Assembly: GCF_032191835.1 (NCBI RefSeq)
Contig: NC_083227.1
Span: forward strand, 41,230,001-41,294,000
Reading direction: 5' to 3'
Source: Heteronotia binoei
Lineage: Eukaryota
DNA: 64,000 nt
The notes under the pieces were generated by a model. That model was not told where the DNA came from. It made no database searches and saw nothing but the letters and a program-made list of their open reading frames with translations. The stretch's first letter is position 1. Every line of letters starts with the position of its first letter. This document shows positions 39,261 through 48,345 of the stretch, piece after piece. Made by a program: the position numbers and the translations under genes.

Positions 39261-42251
39261 GGCCAGCTGAAAGCCTGTGTCACTCCTGAGGTGCTCTATC
39301 CCCTAGCCATGCCTGGCCTCTGTAAAGGCAACTTAGGGGATATATGAGGCCTGACAGAGCTCCTCAGCTCTGGGTGGGTAGTGTGTTGTTCTGCATGGCA
39401 TAGCTAGCTTGGGCTGGCCTATTTCAGGATGGAGGGGTCACTTTTACTGATGTTATTTCTGTGTATATTTCATGGCAAGAGAGAAGGCAGCAGAGTACAG
39501 CCTGATCTCATCAGATCTCAGAAGCTAGGCAGGGTCAGTACATGGAAGAGAGACCACCAAGAAGGGCTGCAGAAGAAGGTACTGGCAAACCACCTCTGCT
39601 TTCCAGTTGCCTTGAAAATCCCTTGCTGGGGTCACCATAAGTCAGCTGCAACTTGGTGGCGCTTCATACACCCACACATCATCAAGAATCCATCCCCGAG
39701 TCACCACTCCTTTCGCTAAAGAGCAGTGCCCAGACCTGTGGGTCCTCAAGGATATGTACACACAAGGGGGTCTGTTACAGGGCACCTGCTTGGCATGCAG
39801 AAGGTCCTAGGTTCAGTCCCCCACCTCTCCAGTTAAAAGAGCCAGAGTCTCAGGCAGTAGAAGACCGCTGCCTGAAACTCTGGAGACTCAGTGCCAGTCT
39901 GAGTAGACAGTACTGACTCTGATGGGCCCATGGTCCGATTCAGCATAAGGAAGTTTCATGTGTTCATGTGTACTTTTTGCCTAACTGAATGAGACACTGT
40001 CATACATTTGGCTGATCGTAACTGGTAACCTGGGTGTACAGACACATTTCTAATTTTTATTTTTAATCATTTAGTTACATCACAACTCCTAGAAATATAT
40101 AAATAGTACATAAAACATAAACAAAGGAAATTATCTAGAACAGAAGTCTTTCATGTTGATAGCTGTCTCCATTTTCTGCCTGTTTCCACTCTGTCACCCT
40201 TTTCTCCTAGTGTATTGTCATGTACACCTTTTAATACCAGTGTACCATCTTTGCAACAGAAGTGGTACTATTCAGAGTATTAAGTTTGTTTTGGAGTATT
40301 CCCTGTTTTTGTCTCAGCTGCTCCTGTATTTCCGAAGGCACACCACAAGGGGAGCAAATTACTTTTGGTCTTTTTTTGTGTGTGGGGGGGGTATGTTGTT
40401 TAAAAACTGCATTTAGAACACATTCATTCGTCTGAATCAGTGGATTTGCATTTTGAAATTCATAAAAAAGTCATTATTACTGAAGTAACTATAGTGAAAG
40501 CAGTAACATTCACCAAATCTTGTGGCTCTGTGGATCTCTCCAACAAGAAAAAAACCCTGACTTTACAGGATTACAGGGAACCATGTGAGGCCATTGAATA
40601 ATGGAAAATGCCTGGCAGAATCCAAACAAGAAAAAGTGGTTACCCTGTGACAAGAACAATTACTCCACATGTGACTGTAACAGCATGTGTCTTGCATGCA
40701 TGAACTCAGTACACTCACATGACCAGAAGAAGTGTTTTCCTCTATGAGATCAGTGGACAACCTAATCCAGCATTCTGTTTTATACGGTGGTCAACGTAGG
40801 TGCCTTGGAAGGCCACCAAAACAGCACAGAGGCCAAAGCCTTCCCCCTGATGCTGCCTTTTAACACTAGGTTTCAGAAGTTTACTTGATTTGCATGTATC
40901 TCTTTCAATATTCCCTCTAAGCTGCAGAATCTTGTGAGCAACGATTCTACTTTGTGAGCTACTGGTATTAAAGTTGTGAGCTACAGCATAAAATATTGTG
41001 CTCTGGGGTCATCCTTCCTGAGCTAAGACAAAAATGTGTGAGCTGGAGGCTAAAAATCTGTGAGCCAGCTCAATCTTAGAGGGAACACTGGTCTCTTTAT
41101 TTTTCATGGTTTGAAATCATGGGTGGATCTATCCTCCATGGATCTGCAACCCCTTTTAAAGCCCTCTGTGCTTGTTGCGACCATCATAATGTCCCCTGGC
41201 AGTGAATTTCGCAATTTAATTACTCATTGAGTACACAAACATTTTTTCTTGTCCATCCTGAACCAATTGCCCATCAATTTCACTGGGATCCTCCAAGTTC
41301 TTGGATTATGGGAGAGGAAGAAAAATCTTCACTCTACCCACATTCTGTACCCTATGTATAATTTCATAAATATGAACATATATATATATATGAACATATG
41401 AAGCTGCCTTATACTGAATCAGACCCTTGGTCCATCAAAGTCAGTATTGTCTTCTCAGACTGGCAGCGGCTCTCCAGGGTCTCAAGCTGAGGTTTTCACA
41501 CCTATTTGCCTGGACCCTTTTTTGGAGATAAATCTGCAACATGTTTCCACTTAGCTTTTTTCAAAACTGAAAAGCCCTGTATTCTTTAGCTTTATTTCAT
41601 GAAAAAGGCAGTCCAATCCCTTCATCACCTTGATTGACCTCTTCTGACCTAACCAGAATCTTATGCAATACTGCAAACCCAGACTGCACCATAAATATAT
41701 GCAGGAACAGTATAACATTGGCCATTTTCAGTCCACCAAATACATACTACTTTTTTTCCAATGTGGCTGCATACTAAATTGGCATTTTCATCAAACTGTC
41801 CACTATAACTCAAAGATACTCTAGTTCGTTTTAGACCTGAGTGTAATAAATAAAATGTACCTGAAAGGAAGACTAGTTTTTTCCTCTGAAGTTGTTAATT
41901 CCCATACAAGTTACAATTATGTACAATACTTTTTGTTAAAATGACATATCTTGCATTCAGGGTTGTCTTCCTTTCAAGTAAATTCAGTAGGCTACTCTCA
42001 CTCCCAAGAGCAGCAGTTCTACCTTGACAGAATTAGCACACACACAATAACAAAGGCCATTTTAATTTTCCTATGATCACCTCTGATTTACTGAAACAAG
42101 TAGGGATCCAAATGCTTGCAAAGGTTTTCAGACATGGTGAAAACAAATGCTACTTTCATTGGCATCAAACTTCCTGTTCCCTGAGCCTCAGTCTGAACCA
42201 TATATCTAACCCAAGCAACCTCTAGCAGCTGAATCAAGTTGGGGGGCAGAA

Positions 42252-44149
42252 TCAGGGGCTCATTTCTCTCTTGACCCCCAGCGATGGCCACAGTCCTGCT
42301 ATGACATTGGTCTGCACAGCTTTCCCAACCAGTTTGGCTTCAATAGCCTTAATGTCATTGCAATGCTGCACCAACTGGGCCTCGGTATTCTGGGAAGTGA
42401 ACTCCAAATCCGAGATCCGGTGCTGAACATCATCATTGCTGCCGGAGAAGTTCCTCAGGGCATTCTGGATGTCAGCCACTGTGGGGTGCAGTCTGGAGAC
42501 CAGAGATTTAATTTCCGCTGTGTCTGCAGCTACCTGCTGCAGTACTGCCATTAGCTGTGCCACAGTAGGCTCAGCAGCCATTTTGTCTAGAAGGAAAGAG
42601 GAAGGAGCTCTTGGCCAAGGTTCCGCTTCCCTGATGTCTGAGGAGGAAGCTGCCTCTATGGTGGTTCTGTGCTCCTCTGTTGCTGTCTGAAGAGTTTCAT
42701 GGGAATGGGCATTAATATTTACAGAACTGTGTTTCCTCAGGCCCATTTCCTGCTCAGGAAACCTGCTTTCCCATCTTCTGGAGGCCCACCAGTTCCAATT
42801 CAGATGTTTATGTAGCCTCCCTCCTGGGGAGATCCTCCACTGAGTCCCCAAGACAGATCTGACAGGCATATTTCTCCTACTACAAGGTTTTCTTTTTTTG
42901 TCAAACCTTCTCTGTTTTGTCAAAACTGAGAGACTGCCGGAATTTCCCCCAGAATCAGAGCAGGTGGGCTGTGTAGTAGAAGCTAGACTCTGGATGAACT
43001 GTCTCTTATGACTGGGGCCTTCACACAGATCATTTCCTTGGCTGCTTTTCTGACAACTGTTGTGTTCTGAAGATTCCTCTGGATTGGGGCCTGCAGGCTG
43101 GAGCTCTGATGTCAGTTGAGAACGTAAGAGAGGTTGGTCTTCGGTCAGTTCTGGTAAACCATTTTCAGAAAGAACAGATTTCGCTTCTCCTCCTTCTGTC
43201 CCCGGACTACTGATCTCCTCATGGCTACTGATGGTCTCCTGATTCATTGAAGCTTCAGTCCCATTCACACCTTCCTCAGAGTAAGCCTCATTTGGTTCAT
43301 TGACTGAGTAAACGTGTACTGACTCAGGCTTAGAATCTTTCTCAGGACTTTGGAAAATTTCTTCTTCTGATATAAACAATGATCCCTCAGGTAAGGCTGC
43401 ACATTCCAAGTCATCCTGCATAGTGATATTCTGATCATGGAGAAATGTTAAGGATTTATCTTGGTCCCCACTATCAATAGCCATGTGGAAAGTCTCCTGC
43501 CTTGGCCTACTGTCTTGATGGTCCCTCAAGGCTTTTCTAAAAGGAACTGAATTTTCTTCCACTCTAGGGTTGTTTGACTCCACATCCTTCTGGCCCTCCT
43601 TGATTAAAGTTTCCTCTGGATTCTGAGAAGTGAACTCCAAATCTGAGATCTGGTGCTTAACATCATTGGTGCTGCCAGAGAGGTTCCTCAGGGCATTCTG
43701 GATGTCAGCCATTGTGGGGTGCAGCCTGGAGACCGCAGATTTAATTTCCGCTGCATTTGCAGAATTTTCTTCTCGGAGGATTTTCTTCTCTGAGGACTCC
43801 TGCAACTCCCCAGATAATACTGCGGGTTCAGCAACTTCCTCTCTGGGGCTTTTCCTACAAGTAACAATTGCGGATGAGTCTTCTCCTTTTCTACAACCAC
43901 AGCATACACTCACAGTCTCCAGACCTAGTTCATCATCTATGGTTATTTCCTCCAAATCACTGAGGAAAAGAATGGCATCTTCTTTTTCCACTGAACTGCT
44001 CTTTGGCTGCCTTTCCAGATGAGCCTCCCTAATCAAATCTTGCTCAACATCCCAGGAAATCTCCTTGCTGGATTTTTTCAGCAGCTCCACTGTAGGTTCA
44101 GAAGCTTCCTGCCAGGGGTCCTTTCCTGTCTTGCTCCCTGTCCCTGCAT
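42252..44149 (-). CDS. FLYWCH-SCAN-KRAB gene, last coding exon: acidic low-complexity region with two coiled-coil repeats, no C2H2 fingers
   Basis: Acceptor cctctttgcttcaacag (AG at 44151-44150), phase 1, matching the KRAB exon; 1898 nt open to TGA; candidate poly(A) signals ATTAAA (42061-42066) and AATAAA (41591-41596) on the minus strand. Confidence 0.8.
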
Positions 44150-45187
44150 CTGTTGAAGCAAAGAGGTGGAAAGTCAGCTTATTCCCCCAGTAATGCAATA
44201 AAGCCCTTCATTTGCTGATAAGACCATTTAACACTATTTGTTATATGTATCATTGTATATGTATCATCATGAAATGCCTTGGACCCCAGGCAACGGAAAA
44301 TATGTTTATAAGAATAAAAGCACCCATCAGGTTTAGAATGTGTTTCGTTCTATTGGCAATTATACCTTATTTTTGTCATTCTACTATAGGTATGTAGATA
44401 CTCCTGAACTTTATCCTCACAATAAGTTTATGAGGTAGGCTAAACCAAAAGATAAATAGGCCAAAGGTCAACCAATGAGCTCCATGGCTTAGGGAGAGGC
44501 AGGGCTTTTTTTGTAGCAGGAACTCCTTTGCATATTAGACCACACCCCTCTTATGTAGTCAATCCTCCAAGAGCTTATAGGGCTCTTAGTACAGGGCCTG
44601 CTCTAAGCTCTTGGAGGACTGGCTACATCAGGGGTGCGTGGCCTAATATGCAAAGAAGTTCCTGCTACAACAAAAAAGTCTTGGGGAGAGGGATTTTCTT
44701 TCATGGAATTCCAAGTGGTATGCAGAGGGAACCCTGGCAATTTTCCACCCAGGTACAGGCCATAAACAGAGTTACAGTCAGGCCAAGCAACAGTGACTGT
44801 CTTTGTGCCACTCAGAAAACTTCACTGGTAAAACAGAGATTAACACTGACACCTAAGGTGGCCAAATCACTGGAGAAAAATGTCCTGCCCCTTTAGTAGA
44901 GGCTTAATGGGATGTTATTTACCTCTGTCCCAATTTTAAAAAAACTTTTGGTTTTCCATTTCCTCACATTAAACCTCATTATACATACAGGACATCTTTT
45001 CCCCAGGCCTGTTGGCAACCCTATTACCACACCTGCCCATGCACCTATCTTCTGGAGTGGTCATGTTGGTCAGCTTGTTGTTGAAAGGGCTCAATAGGCC
45101 CTGAAAGATAGGGACAGCATTTCTTGTTGTTTGCACAGAACCCTAACCACACAGCAGGATTTTCTAGGAACCAAGAGGGACCCTTAC

Positions 45188-45314
45188 TCAGCCAAGACAC
45201 GTTATTGTAATTCTGATGCATAACATTCCAATACAGTGCTTTTTCTTCCTGGTCCATCAAAGTCCATTCCTCCTCAGAGAAACGCAGAGATACATCTTCG
45301 AAGGTGACCAGGTC
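45188..45314 (-). CDS. KRAB-A box exon (127 nt)
   Basis: tttcag|DLVTFEDVSLRFSEEEWTLMDQEEKALYWNVMHQNYNNVSWL|gtaagg; canonical KRAB-A length and phase 0/1. Confidence 0.92.
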
Positions 45315-47104
45315 CTGAAACAACCAGAAGGAAATTATATTAATCACGTGACCATCTTTTACATAGACTTGGAGACAGGATTGCCAAGTAAATCTCAGAT
45401 CAGTGATGGATCACTTGCAGGGTCTTGGGCAAACCCACTGTCCTTCAGTGTCAGTTTGCAGTCTGAGAAGGGGGTATAATAAAGCCACCTTGCATAGTAC
45501 CCGCTGGGGAGGCAGATTGAAACAGTGGGGGGCCCTTTTTATGCCCAAAGAAGGATGATACTATATATAAAATGCACAAATTTTAAAAGAGAGAAATCTA
45601 CAAACACCTCCAAACTATTAATTCTACTGCCATCTAGACATTAATACTAGACAATACTACTAGACATTATATCCCACTGCTATTAGCAACACAGAAGAGC
45701 TCATTCCCACAAGACCGGATGATGACCACTAACTCAGATAGCTTTAAGAAGTGATTGGACAGATGTTTGGAGACTTCTCAAAAAATACCTCTGTTAAGTT
45801 CCACGCTGGCAGAAAGGTAGGATAGAAAAGTGAATACATGTTATATTAAAGGTGTGGAAGTAACAGCAACTGAACAGCCTTCTGACTAATGATACAAGCA
45901 GACCACTGATAGGCAAGTTAGCATAACTAATGCCATTTTCTTGTTATTCTGTTACTCAAGTTATTCTGTATTGCTTTAAAAAGCAAGTAACAGGGCCCAT
46001 ACCTCCAATTTTGTCAGATCTCAGATGCTAAACAGAGTTGAATCTGGCTATTACTTGGATGGGAAACCTCCTTGAAATGCCAGGAGACAGGGGCAGGCCT
46101 TATTCAGCCACCTGCTTGAATATCCTCCAGGCTACTAGTAGGGGTCAGTCACCAGAGGTCGCCATGACTTCCAGGTGCACATGCGGTCCCACACAAAAAA
46201 TTACAAAAAAAAAGAAAAGTTACAGGCAAGTTATTTTCAGCATCTATGCAAAACAGGATGTGGGTAAGATGTTCTGGGGCACATGGGCAAGCAAGACAGT
46301 TGGTGAAAAACAGAAAAGCAATCTTGCAAGATTAAAAAGCAGTATGAATGTTCAAAAGAAGGGCAAAAGACATACATGCTTGGCAAATGTGTGTGCGTGT
46401 GTATAAAAAAACCCCTCTGTAATCTAATCTGTATAGATATATCCTCTGTAATCTAAAGACATCTGCACAGGTCTAAAAGTTGTTTACTATAGTAGATAAA
46501 AAGCAGGTGCTGGATGCTTTTCTAATGGATTTCTTGGGTTTTTGCTGCTGAGATCCCCTTTATGGCAATAAAATTCTGTCTGCTTCTGGAATCTCACTAG
46601 TTATGTTCATCAGTGGGCTTTGGATGCACCAGCTAAGGGCCCATTTGGGCAACACCACAAATAAGAGTGTGGCATCTGTGCACAGAGCAGCCTTGGGAGA
46701 GCACCATACTCAGTGCAAAGAAACATGTTCAGGCAAGCCTCTAGAAGCACCTCTAAGAGATGCGTGACAAACAAGCGAAGCGCTGCCCATTTCCAAAAGC
46801 TTTGTCTGCTTCTCATACAGCTTTCAGAAAGAAAAAACGCTCAGGAGTCTCATTAGGGGAAAAAAAACTGCTACACTTTGGCTGGGCACGTGGTGTCACA
46901 ATCTCTAGTACCTGATTCCCTTTGCATTAAACCTTCTGACATTACGTGCATTTGTAAAGTGTTTCCTAGAAATGTTCTCCTCTCCCCACCCCCCCTTCCA
47001 ATGATCTGAGGCTGCTGTTGCTGGTTAATGACTCTGCATTGCCTGCTTCAACTTCAAAAGCACTCAGGGGCCAGCGCCAACCACTAGTAAGCAGTTCTTG
47101 TTTC

Positions 47105-47400
47105 ACACAGGACATAAGAGAAGCCATGTTGGATCAGGCCAATGGCCCATCCAGTCCAACACTCTGTGTCACACAGTGGCCAAAAAACCCAAGTGTCATC
47201 AGGAGGTCCACCAGTGGGGCCAGGACACTAGAAGCCCTCCCACTGTGTCCCCCCAAGCACCAAGAATACAGAGCATCACTGCCCTAGACAGAGAGTTCCA
47301 ACAATACGGCTGTGGACCTCTGCTCCATATGCTTATCCAATCCCCTCTTGAAGCTGTCTATGCTTGTAGCCACCATCACCTCCTGTGGCAGTGAATTGCA
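47105..47400 (-). mobile_element. CR1-type LINE 3' fragment in an intron
   Basis: cataagagaagccatgttggatcaggccaatggcccatccagtccaac matches the recalled squamate CR1 3' end in reverse. Confidence 0.6.
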
Positions 47401-47469
47401 CAGAATACACAGCAGTTCTGCAGAACCCATTCAACAGGCAGAGCCATTAAACACTCTCAAAACACTTAC

Positions 47470-48345
47470 CTTCTCCAGCTCCTGACCAACCATGACCAGT
47501 TCCTGGTCCCCCAAATAGGTCTCGGCCAGCCAAACTGCCTCCATGCTGGTTCTTGGCTCCCTGGCTTTCACCCAAGCCTGCATGCTCACTGGTAGCACAG
47601 CTAGGAACTGTTCCAAGATGACCATGTCCACAATCTGGTCTTTGTCGTGCTCCCGAGGACACAACCACTGCCGAGCTGCCTCACTTATCCAGGACAGAAT
47701 CTTCTGGGGATTTGCTCCAGGTGGGACAGCGCCCGAGCGAAACCTCTGCCTCCCAGCTTCCTGGCTGGCCTGAAGGTGGACTGAATGGGATGTTTGGGGC
47801 TCCTCACAGAGCACGGGACTGGCCATGGCACCACCATCCTTGAACCTCTCTGAGCATTCCTGCAAGTCTGGAGGAGTTACAAAGACCACTGAGGATGGCT
47901 CTGCAGGAACCGATTCAGCAACTGTGGCAGATGTTTGCGAGTGACACGTCCCTTGCAGAGTTGCACTCAGACATGCTCTCAAGCGCTCCATTGTCTGTTT
48001 GGGGTTTTGGATACATGGCTTCTTGGCAGGAACTGTTTCCGACAGCCCATCAGAAGTTGGCGGGACCCCTTTGTACGTCAGTTGTGGAACAGAAGGGGTT
48101 GTGGTCTTTGTGCTCCGCTCAATTCTCTTGGCTTCTCTGGCTGCCTTGATTGGAGGGTGACAGTGTGCTGAGTACTTTATGACGCGGTCATCATATGTGT
48201 GAGCTCTCCCCGGGCAATGGTCCTTATAGTAGATTGCACATTTCCAAAAGGTTTTGTTCCCAACCACACGCTCCTTTGTATGCAAGTATCCATCATAAAC
48301 CAACTGATCCCGCCCTTTCTTACTCTTCACATACTGTAGGGGCAT
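47470..48345 (-). CDS. First coding exon: N-terminal FLYWCH zinc finger (aa ~5-65) plus SCAN domain (aa ~196-278)
   Basis: KSKKGRDQLVYDGYLH...TFWKC...HCPGRAHT...HCHPP (FLYWCH); RQRFR...ARQWLCP...EQFLAVLP..MQAWVK...EAVWLAETY (SCAN); donor AAG|GTAAGT at 47469 in phase 0, matching the KRAB acceptor. Confidence 0.9.

What the first reader, a model, noticed from the sequence alone, without database searches (positions are those of the whole stretch)
42300..43760. Two LINE-1-ORF1-like trimeric coiled-coil modules where the zinc fingers should be
Seen: a ~125-nt segment occurs twice in frame (~43626-43754 and ~42394-42520): AEIKSAVSRLHPTMADIQNALRNLSGSTNDVKHQISDLEFTSQN and AEIKSLVSRLHPTVADIQNALRNFSGSNDDVQHRISDLEFTSQN. 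The second copy is preceded by MAAEPTVAQLMAVLQQVAAD and continues in heptads. RISDLE fits the R-h-x-x-h-E trimerisation motif known from L1 ORF1p coiled coils. The 630-codon exon has no stop despite low complexity. Inference: an exonised and partly duplicated L1/Tx1 ORF1 N-terminus, reminiscent of mammalian L1TD1 but independent. It could oligomerise the protein or co-assemble with L1 ORF1p.
Basis: partly seen in the sequence, partly recalled or inferred. Interest (0 to 1): 0.72.

Follow-up and report, generated by a model that had tools for sequence, protein, structure and literature searches.

The report
L1 ORF1 coiled coil in lizard KRAB gene
The last exon of a gecko FLYWCH-SCAN-KRAB gene ends in a piece of an ancient LINE-1 retrotransposon (the start of ORF1, its coiled coil) that all lizards and snakes examined have kept under selection, and this gecko alone carries a second, partial copy of it further up the same exon.

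Summary
The repeat is real. It is 150 nt, 88% identical and in frame, at window 43613-43762 and 42380-42529 on the minus strand. Both copies lie in the last exon of Heteronotia binoei LOC132572350, a FLYWCH-SCAN-KRAB gene with no C2H2 array. A spliced RNA contig carries both copies.

The 3' copy belongs to a roughly 440-570 nt block derived from an L1-clade LINE. The block holds the 5'UTR end, the ORF1 start codon and about 85 coiled-coil codons in the original frame. A net 4-nt gap follows, so the conserved 24-residue tail is the start of the ORF1 RRM read in the +1 frame. The evidence is homology to decayed L1-like elements in turtles:
- Protein profile: E 2.5e-16 and 8.7e-15 at a library size of 1.84 billion.
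- DNA: nhmmer E 3.7e-26.
In those elements the same segment runs straight into a Transposase_22-like RRM and L1 ORF2 remains.

The module is present across squamates, with dN/dS 0.11-0.31 in five of six pairs against 0.4-0.8 in the linker. It is predicted as one helix of about 90 residues with a conserved R-h-x-x-h-E motif in register.

The 5' copy is a partial insertion seen only in Heteronotia. It lacks the motif's arginine and both ends of the helix.

This is a new, apparently independent member of a known kind: L1 ORF1p co-option, as in DUF3669 KZFPs, Lyosin and L1TD1. Trimerisation was not tested. The scan had noted this gene before.

The parts
47469..48345 (-). First coding exon: FLYWCH zinc finger plus SCAN domain. 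The ATG is at 48345 and the splice donor at 47469.
   Evidence: Pfam FLYWCH E 1.7e-13 and SCAN E 2.6e-24. The exon end comes from the RNA contig.
45188..45313 (-). KRAB-A exon (126 nt).
   Evidence: Open stretch with the KRAB sequence. Pfam KRAB E 1.7e-14 on P0026. Exon limits come from the RNA contig.
42252..44149 (-). Coding part of the last exon: 630 codons plus the stop at 42254-42252. It has no C2H2 fingers. It consists of a long, poorly conserved linker followed by the L1-derived module.
   Evidence: ORF; acceptor at 44149 from the RNA contig; P0026 100% identical; no zf-C2H2 Pfam hit.
42201..42640 (-). L1-derived block. The solid part is given here; weaker DNA similarity reaches up to about 42772. 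It holds the 5'UTR end, the start of ORF1 and the start of the RRM, and continues about 50 nt past the host stop codon.
   Evidence: nhmmer of the window against L002 gives E 3.7e-26, against L001 1.5e-22 plus a second piece at 1.4e-5, and against L006 2e-20. DNA alignment A3.
42327..42581 (-). ORF1 start codon (42581-42579) and about 85 codons of the ORF1 coiled coil, read in the element's original frame. This is the conserved module.
   Evidence: Ungapped 102-residue alignment to the L002 ORF1 N-terminus. The squamate HMM hits L001 and L002 at E 2.5e-16 and 8.7e-15. AF2 predicts a single helix. dN/dS is 0.11-0.31 in five of six pairs.
42402..42419 (-). RISDLE: the R-h-x-x-h-E motif in g-a-b-c-d-e register.
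   Evidence: Heptad analysis; the motif is kept in 18 of 20 squamate sequences.
42252..42326 (-). 24-codon tail plus stop. This is the start of the L1 RRM (the CNIRVVGVPEG region) read in the +1 frame, after a net 4-nt gap lying between about 42327 and 42311.
   Evidence: DNA alignments. The +1 frame of L002 gives ..SGLWVSL.. against the window's ..AGLWPSL... The tblastx hit is in the shifted frame. The tail is conserved in all squamates.
42380..42529 (-). Copy B: the part of the module that served as source of the duplication.
   Evidence: the repeat finder family D1.
43613..43762 (-). Copy A: a partial, Heteronotia-lineage duplicate of the middle of the module, inserted in frame into the linker. 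It reads QISDLE at 43635-43652.
   Evidence: 88% identity. It is a clean 50-codon insertion relative to Gekko, Eublepharis and Lacerta and is absent from all other orthologue proteins examined. dS between A and B is 0.19.
43759..43790 (-). A 16-nt tandem duplication (two GAGAAGAAAAT-containing units) at the 5' junction of copy A. The 3' junction lies in a CAGAAT shared by donor and target.
   Evidence: Read directly from the sequence and from the orthologue alignment.

Best explanation
Origin. In the common ancestor of squamates an L1-clade LINE inserted in sense orientation at the end of the coding region of a FLYWCH-SCAN-KRAB gene. The insertion was truncated within its 5'UTR. The host reading frame ran through the remaining 5'UTR into ORF1. 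The first 85 or so ORF1 codons, its coiled coil, were kept. A net 4-nt deletion then shifted the frame, so the start of the RRM is read as a new 24-residue tail ending in a stop. The rest of the element decayed in the 3'UTR. This much is shown by homology and conservation.

Function (inferred). The module serves as a C-terminal self-association domain, most likely a parallel trimer as in ORF1p and in DUF3669 KZFPs. Combined with the dimerising SCAN domain and the KRAB repressor domain, it would give a multivalent FLYWCH-targeted repressor.

Copy A. It is a later event in the Heteronotia lineage. About 134 nt from the middle of the module, plus a 16-nt local tandem duplication, were copied in frame into the loosely constrained linker by a microhomology or template-switch type event. 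It is most likely a tolerated passenger, not a second oligomerisation module.
For: The repeat and the ORF are established.

Gene model and expression: Pfam domains and a spliced RNA contig spanning both copies.

Orthologues with the same architecture and a C-terminal module occur in geckos, iguanians, an amphisbaenian, a cordylid, lacertids, a skink, a varanid and viperids.

L1 origin:
- phmmer of the module finds turtle sequences P0013 (E 8e-10) and P0015 (E 7e-5) in 1.84 billion proteins.
- A squamate-only HMM scores L001 at 75.5 bits and L002 at 70.6 bits, E 2.5e-16 and 8.7e-15 at Z = 1.84e9, with no other hit among 2833 six-frame pieces.
- The alignment is ungapped over 102 residues and starts at the ORF1 methionine.
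- DNA homology gives E 3.7e-26, 1.5e-22 and 2e-20. It extends into the 5'UTR and past the host stop.
- In L002 the homologous segment continues directly into a piece whose 25 of 30 nearest named Atlas clusters are PF02994 Transposase_22 (score 0.94, 194 of 256 features).
- In L001 a downstream piece has LINE-1 ORF2p as its five best PDB hits (E 0.0025-0.006).
- L001 and L006 lie in different gene neighbourhoods and have no FLYWCH, SCAN or KRAB sequence.

Selection: dN/dS is 0.11-0.31 in the coiled coil in five of six pairs, against 0.37-0.84 in the linker.

Structure: AF2 with 22 sequences gives one helix over residues 10-100, mean pLDDT 84. There is a single heptad register, and R-h-x-x-h-E is in register and conserved.

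Precedent: the DUF3669 domain of KZFPs is an L1 ORF1p trimerisation-domain fragment, shown experimentally to trimerise (bioRxiv 10.1101/2025.03.01.640934).

Copy A: it is absent from the other squamate orthologue proteins examined and is a clean 50-codon insertion. dS between A and B is 0.19, against about 0.21 between Heteronotia and Gekko.
Against: - No Pfam L1 ORF1 profile (PF02994) or DUF3669 (PF12417) matches any of 22 module sequences at E <= 10.
- The short RRM pieces of the turtle elements gave no Pfam or PDB hit on their own. Their ORF1 identity therefore rests on the Atlas feature search, on contiguity and on the ORF2 hit.
- No intact source L1 and no squamate L1 with this N-terminus was found.
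- The profile search of the PDB finds only generic coiled coils, not mammalian ORF1p.
- The oligomeric state was not tested, because only a monomer could be folded.
- In viperids the motif's arginine is lost and prolines appear, so the function is not universally retained.
- The closest pair (Gekko-Heteronotia) gives dN/dS 0.52 in the module, based on few changes.
Confidence: 0.72

Rival explanations
1. Decoy or restriction factor. The ORF1-derived coiled coil co-assembles with ORF1p of active L1 families. This would poison their trimers or bring a KRAB repressor to L1 ribonucleoprotein or L1 loci, as Gag-derived restriction factors do for retroviruses.
For: The module is the part of ORF1p that determines trimer assembly (homology). 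L1TD1 associates with ORF1p according to the title and abstract of PMC11925450 (listed). DKZFPs hetero-oligomerise through their L1-derived domain. Squamate genomes carry many L1 lineages according to the abstract of PMC5381506.
Against: The module is under purifying selection with no sign of an arms race (dN/dS 0.11-0.31 in five of six pairs). It has been nearly fixed for the whole squamate radiation, whereas the N-terminal part of L1ORF1p is described as rapidly evolving (abstract of PMC5940361). No squamate L1 with a matching N-terminus was found.
Confidence: 0.15
2. Two functional modules. Copy A is a second working coiled-coil unit that adds valency or pairs with copy B within or between chains.
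For: Copy A has stayed open and in frame for a time comparable with the Heteronotia-Gekko split (dS 0.19). dN/dS between A and B is 0.44. Copy A is transcribed. A run labelled as a second organism holds its 5' junction (X3 piece starting at 43734).
Against: Copy A covers only 44-50 residues from the middle of the helix. It lacks the arginine of R-h-x-x-h-E. The single-sequence AF2 model shows broken helices with pLDDT 48-84. It is absent from every other orthologue protein examined. It sits in a linker whose dN/dS is 0.4-0.8, where neutral in-frame insertions are tolerated.
Confidence: 0.1
3. The resemblance to L1 ORF1 is spurious or runs the other way. Either the module is a host coiled coil and the turtle matches reflect coiled-coil composition, or an L1 captured host sequence.
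For: Coiled coils do give spurious hits. One search also lists repeat-rich bacterial and mollusc proteins, and Pfam gives many weak coiled-coil matches. No curated L1 ORF1 profile matches.
Against: The match is collinear and ungapped over 102 residues. It includes non-heptad positions, the start methionine and the Cys-Asn-Asp-Ile-Lys stretch. It holds at the DNA level (E down to 3.7e-26). It continues upstream of the ATG and downstream into the RRM-coding DNA, which the host reads in another frame. That pattern is expected only if the host exon derives from the element.
Confidence: 0.04
4. Neutral relic. The gene simply ends in old transposon sequence that has no role.
For: The module is degraded in viperids.
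Against: The module has 65-82% amino-acid identity across non-snake squamates, while the adjacent linker has 33-72%. Its dN/dS is well below that of the linker. The frameshifted tail is nearly invariant.
Confidence: 0.04

Closest known systems
DUF3669 domain (PF12417) of KRAB zinc-finger proteins such as ZNF746/PARIS, ZNF282 and ZNF777 (Rosspopoff et al. 2025, bioRxiv 10.1101/2025.03.01.640934)
   Same: In both cases a fragment of L1 ORF1p covering the trimerisation coiled coil up to the junction with the RRM was co-opted into a KRAB-containing transcription factor. Both are kept under purifying selection and have about 10 heptads with R-h-x-x-h-E motifs. Trimerisation is shown experimentally for DUF3669.
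   Different: There is no PF12417 match in any of the 22 sequences. Here the module is C-terminal, in the last exon, not N-terminal to KRAB. The host gene has FLYWCH and SCAN domains and no C2H2 array. The event is squamate-specific rather than amniote-wide. The RRM junction is read out of frame. The oligomeric state is untested.
Lyosin (MYL4-L1 ORF1), L1-RFX5, NUP42-L1 and USP4-L1 (Kitao et al. 2025, PMC12129022)
   Same: L1 ORF1 sequence was turned into a first or last coding exon of a host gene. For Lyosin this happened in sauropsids, with purifying selection, and the source L1 is no longer recognisable by RepeatMasker.
   Different: Those exons keep the coiled coil plus RRM (and the CTD in NUP42-L1) and are alternative isoforms. 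Here only the coiled coil survives, the exon is constitutive in the RNA seen, and the gene is not in their list. Their screen needed similarity to ORF1p.
L1TD1 (mammals; PMC4161310)
   Same: A host protein-coding sequence derived from L1 ORF1.
   Different: L1TD1 is almost entirely ORF1-derived, is an RNA-binding protein and is cytoplasmic (abstracts of PMC4161310, PMC11925450 and PMC11014241). Here there is no RNA-binding part, and the module is an appendage of a KRAB/SCAN protein.
L1 ORF1p itself (type II ORF1p: coiled coil, RRM, CTD; Pfam Transposase_22)
   Same: The N-terminal coiled coil is homologous to that of L1-like elements, including the start codon. The R-h-x-x-h-E motif is in register.
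   Different: The RRM and CTD are absent as protein, and there is no Pfam match. It is not a transposon gene but part of a host transcript.

Membership tests
L1 ORF1p (Pfam PF02994 Transposase_22; coiled coil + RRM + CTD) | Match to the curated family profile | tested here: not met
   No PF02994 hit at E <= 10 for the ORF, for either copy, or for any of 22 module sequences.
L1 ORF1p (Pfam PF02994 Transposase_22; coiled coil + RRM + CTD) | Sequence homology to ORF1 of elements that also carry an RRM and ORF2 | tested here: met
   HMM E 2.5e-16 and 8.7e-15. nhmmer E 3.7e-26. The downstream piece gives Transposase_22 clusters in the Atlas. L1 ORF2p PDB hits in L001.
L1 ORF1p (Pfam PF02994 Transposase_22; coiled coil + RRM + CTD) | RRM and C-terminal domain present in the protein | tested here: not met
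   The frame shifts before the RRM and the ORF stops 24 codons later. There is no similarity further downstream.
L1 ORF1p (Pfam PF02994 Transposase_22; coiled coil + RRM + CTD) | Homotrimeric parallel coiled coil | not testable with these tools
   Only a monomer could be folded. The heptads and R-h-x-x-h-E are compatible with a trimer.
DUF3669-KZFP (PF12417) | PF12417 match, N-terminal to KRAB, followed by a C2H2 array | tested here: not met
   No PF12417 hit. The module is C-terminal. No zf-C2H2 hit.
KRAB / SCAN zinc-finger protein | KRAB and SCAN domains | tested here: met
   SCAN E 1.7e-23 and KRAB E 1.7e-14 on P0026.
KRAB / SCAN zinc-finger protein | Tandem C2H2 zinc-finger array | tested here: not met
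   No zf-C2H2 hit at E <= 1 in six orthologues. Only finger-like remnants were seen by eye.
R-h-x-x-h-E trimerisation motif (short coiled coils) | R at g, hydrophobic at a and d, E at e | tested here: met
   Met for copy B and kept in 18 of 20 squamate sequences. Copy A has Q instead of R, so it is not met there.
L1TD1 | Protein almost entirely ORF1-derived, with RNA-binding domains | tested here: not met
   Only the coiled coil is retained.

The most novel reading that the evidence does not exclude
Squamates co-opted the L1 ORF1p trimerisation domain into a KRAB repressor independently of the amniote DUF3669 event. They placed it at the C-terminus of a protein that also carries a dimerising SCAN domain. 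A dimer-plus-trimer combination would build networks or condensates on FLYWCH-bound targets. Its invariant tail is a peptide born from an out-of-frame reading of the RRM. In Heteronotia the domain has begun to multiply within the exon.
Probability: 0.35. Interest if true: 0.7.

Novelty: new member of a known kind. Interest (0 to 1): 0.55.

Why it matters
Few host proteins are known to derive from LINE-1 coding sequence: L1TD1, Lyosin and three other fusion isoforms, and the DUF3669 domain of KZFPs. This would be a further, pan-squamate case. It would also be a second, apparently independent instance of a KRAB transcription factor acquiring the ORF1p coiled coil, which suggests a recurrent route to multimeric repressors. 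It shows that screens based on ORF1p or Transposase_22 profiles miss exaptations that keep only the fast-evolving coiled coil. It also gives a clear example of a conserved peptide created by a frameshift inside a transposon-derived exon. The Heteronotia-specific copy A is a dated, clean example of intra-exon duplication by microhomology.

Tried and rejected
- Pfam on the ORF, both copies, 22 module sequences and full orthologues gave only sub-threshold generic coiled-coil families. DUF7491 scored 23 bits against a cut-off of 30, only on the Heteronotia copies, and was judged meaningless.
- The Atlas search on the module returned bacterial hypothetical clusters and was uninformative.
- The search for homologous proteins with a 250-residue query restricted to the module found no ORF1-length relatives. 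A profile of the turtle N-termini found only one more turtle fragment.
- Pfam on short stop-free pieces of the turtle elements gave nothing. The PDB search on the two RRM pieces and on the endonuclease-like piece gave nothing significant.
- The PDB profile search with the module found only generic coiled coils.
- A motif search for an L1 ORF1 RRM start in the window found none. tblastx of the turtle RRM and ORF2 DNA against the window found nothing beyond the block itself.
- Four encoding-contig look-ups failed because only the longest isoform is on record.
The full-length protein used was the database entry P0026.
- Stops in the L1-like copies were read through only as X, inside scripts.
Full report
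**Observation**

The minus strand of window 42252-44198 is a 648-codon open frame. The repeat finder reports one 150-nt direct repeat, at 42380-42529 and 43613-43762. It is 88% identical, ungapped and spaced 1233 nt apart. Within-window blastn gives E about 1e-50 and finds no other copy in the 64 kb. The 3' copy (B) reads RISDLE at 42402-42419. The 5' copy (A) reads QISDLE at 43635-43652.

**The gene**

- The open frame is the last exon of a three-exon coding model on the minus strand.
- The first exon (48345-47469) holds FLYWCH (E 1.7e-13) and SCAN (E 2.6e-24).
- The KRAB-A exon is 45313-45188.
- The last exon runs from 44149.
- The database protein P0026, LOC132572350 of Heteronotia binoei (966 aa), is 100% identical to the window. 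The window is therefore from Bynoe's gecko.
- One 3685-nt contig from an RNA library joins 48000..47469 | 45313..45188 | 44149..42050. It has 13 mismatches over the last exon and spans both copies.
- Raw RNA reads cover the exon thinly and leave the unique intron stretch just upstream of the last exon (44239-44437) uncovered.
- No C2H2 finger is detected by Pfam in this protein or in five orthologues.
- I made no joined spliced model of my own. P0026 was used as stored.

**Orthologues**

phmmer of the last 109 residues against 1.84 billion representatives returned 19 hits. Eleven of them are proteins or fragments of 108-939 aa with the module at their extreme C-terminus. The named hits and further searches give the same FLYWCH-SCAN-KRAB, linker, module architecture in many squamates:
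- Geckos: Gekko kuhli, G. japonicus, Paroedura, Eublepharis, Sphaerodactylus.
- Iguanians: Sceloporus, two Anolis species, Pogona.
- Other lizards: Rhineura, Hemicordylus, Podarcis, Lacerta, Tiliqua, Varanus.
- Viperid snakes.

The module is 65-82% identical to Heteronotia in non-snake squamates, apart from Sphaerodactylus at 56%. The linker is 33-72% identical.

Pairwise Nei-Gojobori dN/dS among Heteronotia, Gekko kuhli, Eublepharis and Lacerta:

| Region | dN/dS |
|---|---|
| Coiled coil | 0.11-0.31 (0.52 for the closest pair, few changes) |
| Linker | 0.37-0.84 |
| Translated 5'UTR-like stretch | 0.56-1.03 |

**Origin from an L1-clade ORF1**

- Two weaker hits, P0013 (Caretta caretta, E 8e-10) and P0015 (Logan contigs, E 7e-5), are not orthologues.
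- Their loci (L001, L002) and a third turtle locus (L006, Mauremys) were fetched.
- An HMM built only from 21 squamate C-termini scores L001 at 75.5 bits and L002 at 70.6 bits. At the size of the 1.84-billion library these are E 2.5e-16 and 8.7e-15. L006 scores 43 bits. Nothing else scores among 2833 six-frame pieces.
- The alignment of the window to L002 is ungapped over 102 residues. It begins a few residues before the shared methionine and ends at the His-Ser-Arg that precedes the RRM.
- In L002 the same frame continues, after one stop, into Cys-Asn-Ile-Arg-Val-Val-Gly-Val-Pro-Glu-Gly.
- That 34-residue piece has PF02994 Transposase_22 clusters as 25 of its 30 nearest named Atlas neighbours (score 0.94, 194 of 256 features, recognition 2788).
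- In L001 a roughly 450-nt insertion splits the same point. Further downstream a 119-residue piece has LINE-1 ORF2p structures as its five best PDB hits (E 0.0025-0.006).
- L001 lies next to a sortilin-like gene and L006 next to a P450 gene. Neither has FLYWCH, SCAN or KRAB sequence. They are 74-76% identical to each other in DNA. They are therefore dispersed, decayed copies of an L1-like family.
- Pfam and PDB searches on the short stop-free RRM pieces alone found nothing. The ORF1 identity of these elements therefore rests on the Atlas result, on contiguity and on the ORF2 hit.

**Extent and frame**

- nhmmer aligns window 42772-42201 (minus strand) to L002 at E 3.7e-26, to L001 at 1.5e-22 with a second piece at 1.4e-5 across its insertion, and to L006 at 2e-20.
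- The similarity starts upstream of the ORF1 ATG. Part of the element's 5'UTR is thus translated as host linker.
- The similarity also continues about 50 nt beyond the host stop.
- Between about 42327 and 42311 the host has a net 4-nt gap relative to the elements.
- Downstream of the gap the DNA still aligns, but the host reads it in the +1 frame. L002 in the +1 frame gives ..Ser-Gly-Leu-Trp-Val-Ser-Leu.. where the window has ..Ala-Gly-Leu-Trp-Pro-Ser-Leu...
- The nearly invariant squamate tail (Gln-Thr-Asn-Val-Ile-Ala-Gly-Leu-Trp) is therefore a frameshift-born peptide, not the first strand of the RRM.
- This pattern shows the direction of transfer: element to host gene.

**Structure**

- AlphaFold2 with the 22-sequence alignment predicts one uninterrupted helix, residues 10-100 of 112. 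Mean pLDDT is 84, and block means reach 94-97 in the best-predicted stretches.
- Conserved hydrophobic positions follow one heptad register for about 11 heptads.
- In that register RISDLE has R at g, I at a, L at d and E at e, which is the R-h-x-x-h-E pattern. It is kept in 18 of 20 squamate sequences, and L002 has R-I-S-G-V-E.
- The oligomeric state could not be computed here.
- A PDB profile search returns only generic coiled coils, several of them trimeric, and no mammalian ORF1p.

**Copy A**

- In a codon alignment, copy A is a clean 50-codon insertion in Heteronotia. It lies between Lys-Lys-Ile and Gln-Asn-Pro-Glu-Glu, which are adjacent in Gekko, Eublepharis and Lacerta.
- It is missing from every other orthologue protein examined.
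- Its 5' junction carries a 16-nt tandem duplication (43790-43759). Its 3' junction lies in a CAGAAT present in both donor and target. This points to a template-switch or microhomology event.
- A and B differ at 13 of 132 core positions (dS 0.19, dN/dS 0.44). This is comparable with the Heteronotia-Gekko dS of about 0.21.
- Both copies carry derived changes. The insertion is therefore old but specific to the Heteronotia lineage.
- A run labelled as a second organism holds a contig that ends 29 nt inside copy A's 5' end.
- Copy A lacks the first 20 or so and the last 25 or so residues of the helix, and the motif's arginine.
- A single-sequence AF2 model shows broken helices with block pLDDT 48-84.

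**Comparison with what is known**

- Kitao et al. (PMC12129022) describe L1 ORF1-derived exons in MYL4 (Lyosin, sauropsids), RFX5, NUP42 and USP4. All of them keep the coiled coil plus RRM. This gene is not among them.
- Rosspopoff et al. (bioRxiv 10.1101/2025.03.01.640934) show that the DUF3669 domain of a KZFP subfamily is an L1 ORF1p trimerisation-domain fragment reaching the TD-RRM junction. They show that it forms trimers with two RhxxhE motifs and drives nuclear condensates.
- The squamate module has no PF12417 match, sits at the other end of the protein and lies in a different gene type. It is best read as an independent event of the same kind. Independence is inferred from position and the lack of a profile match; it was not shown by a tree.

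**Verdict**

'Two trimeric modules' is not supported: there is one conserved module and one partial, lineage-specific duplicate. Function as a self-association (probably trimerisation) domain is inferred, not shown. The same gene was noted elsewhere in this scan (s1-340639). A younger L1-capped KRAB-ZNF gene in this genome (s1-323883, not tested here) illustrates how such an event can start.

Noticed in passing
window about 42795-43070 (minus strand): Just upstream of the L1 block the linker shows patterns that look like three or four decayed C2H2 fingers when the orthologues are aligned. Examples are C-x2-C-G...H...Q, ..IKHRR.., ..LGAHQRIH..RK. This would mean the element landed at or inside a former finger array. 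Pfam zf-C2H2 does not detect them, so this is by eye only.
   Followed up: partly
P0038 (Crotalus), P0039 (Vipera), P0017 (Protobothrops), L005: Viperid snakes keep the gene. Their module has lost the arginine of R-h-x-x-h-E, gained prolines and changed the tail, which suggests relaxed constraint in snakes.
   Followed up: partly
L001 13895-13900, L002 828-830, L006 about 10570: Three L1-like copies, 74-86% identical to one another where compared, all carry an in-frame TGA at or next to the same codon, between the coiled coil and the RRM (HSR*CNIR). This may be parallel CpG decay of CGA or a feature of the family. It is unexplained.
   Followed up: no
window 44438-44835 and 47025-47422: Intronic repeats reach word depths of up to several hundred thousand in the RNA-library contigs and depths of tens to about 1,500 in the raw RNA reads, with many rearranged joints. 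The first overlaps a 75-nt inverted repeat (44506-44580 / 44601-44675, 87% complementary). They are probably abundant SINE-like elements and not part of this gene's mRNA.
   Followed up: no
window 42250: All four RNA runs read C where the window has A, two bases after the stop codon. It is probably a polymorphism or a difference between individuals.
   Followed up: no
P0029 (Paroedura picta) residues about 806-816: An 11-residue insertion in the first heptads of the module, seen only in this species' model. It could be real or an annotation artefact.
   Followed up: no
window 42591-42605: A polypyrimidine tract plus AG lies directly before the ancestral ORF1 ATG and looks like a splice acceptor. 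The RNA contig runs straight through it, so it is not used in the transcript seen.
   Followed up: partly
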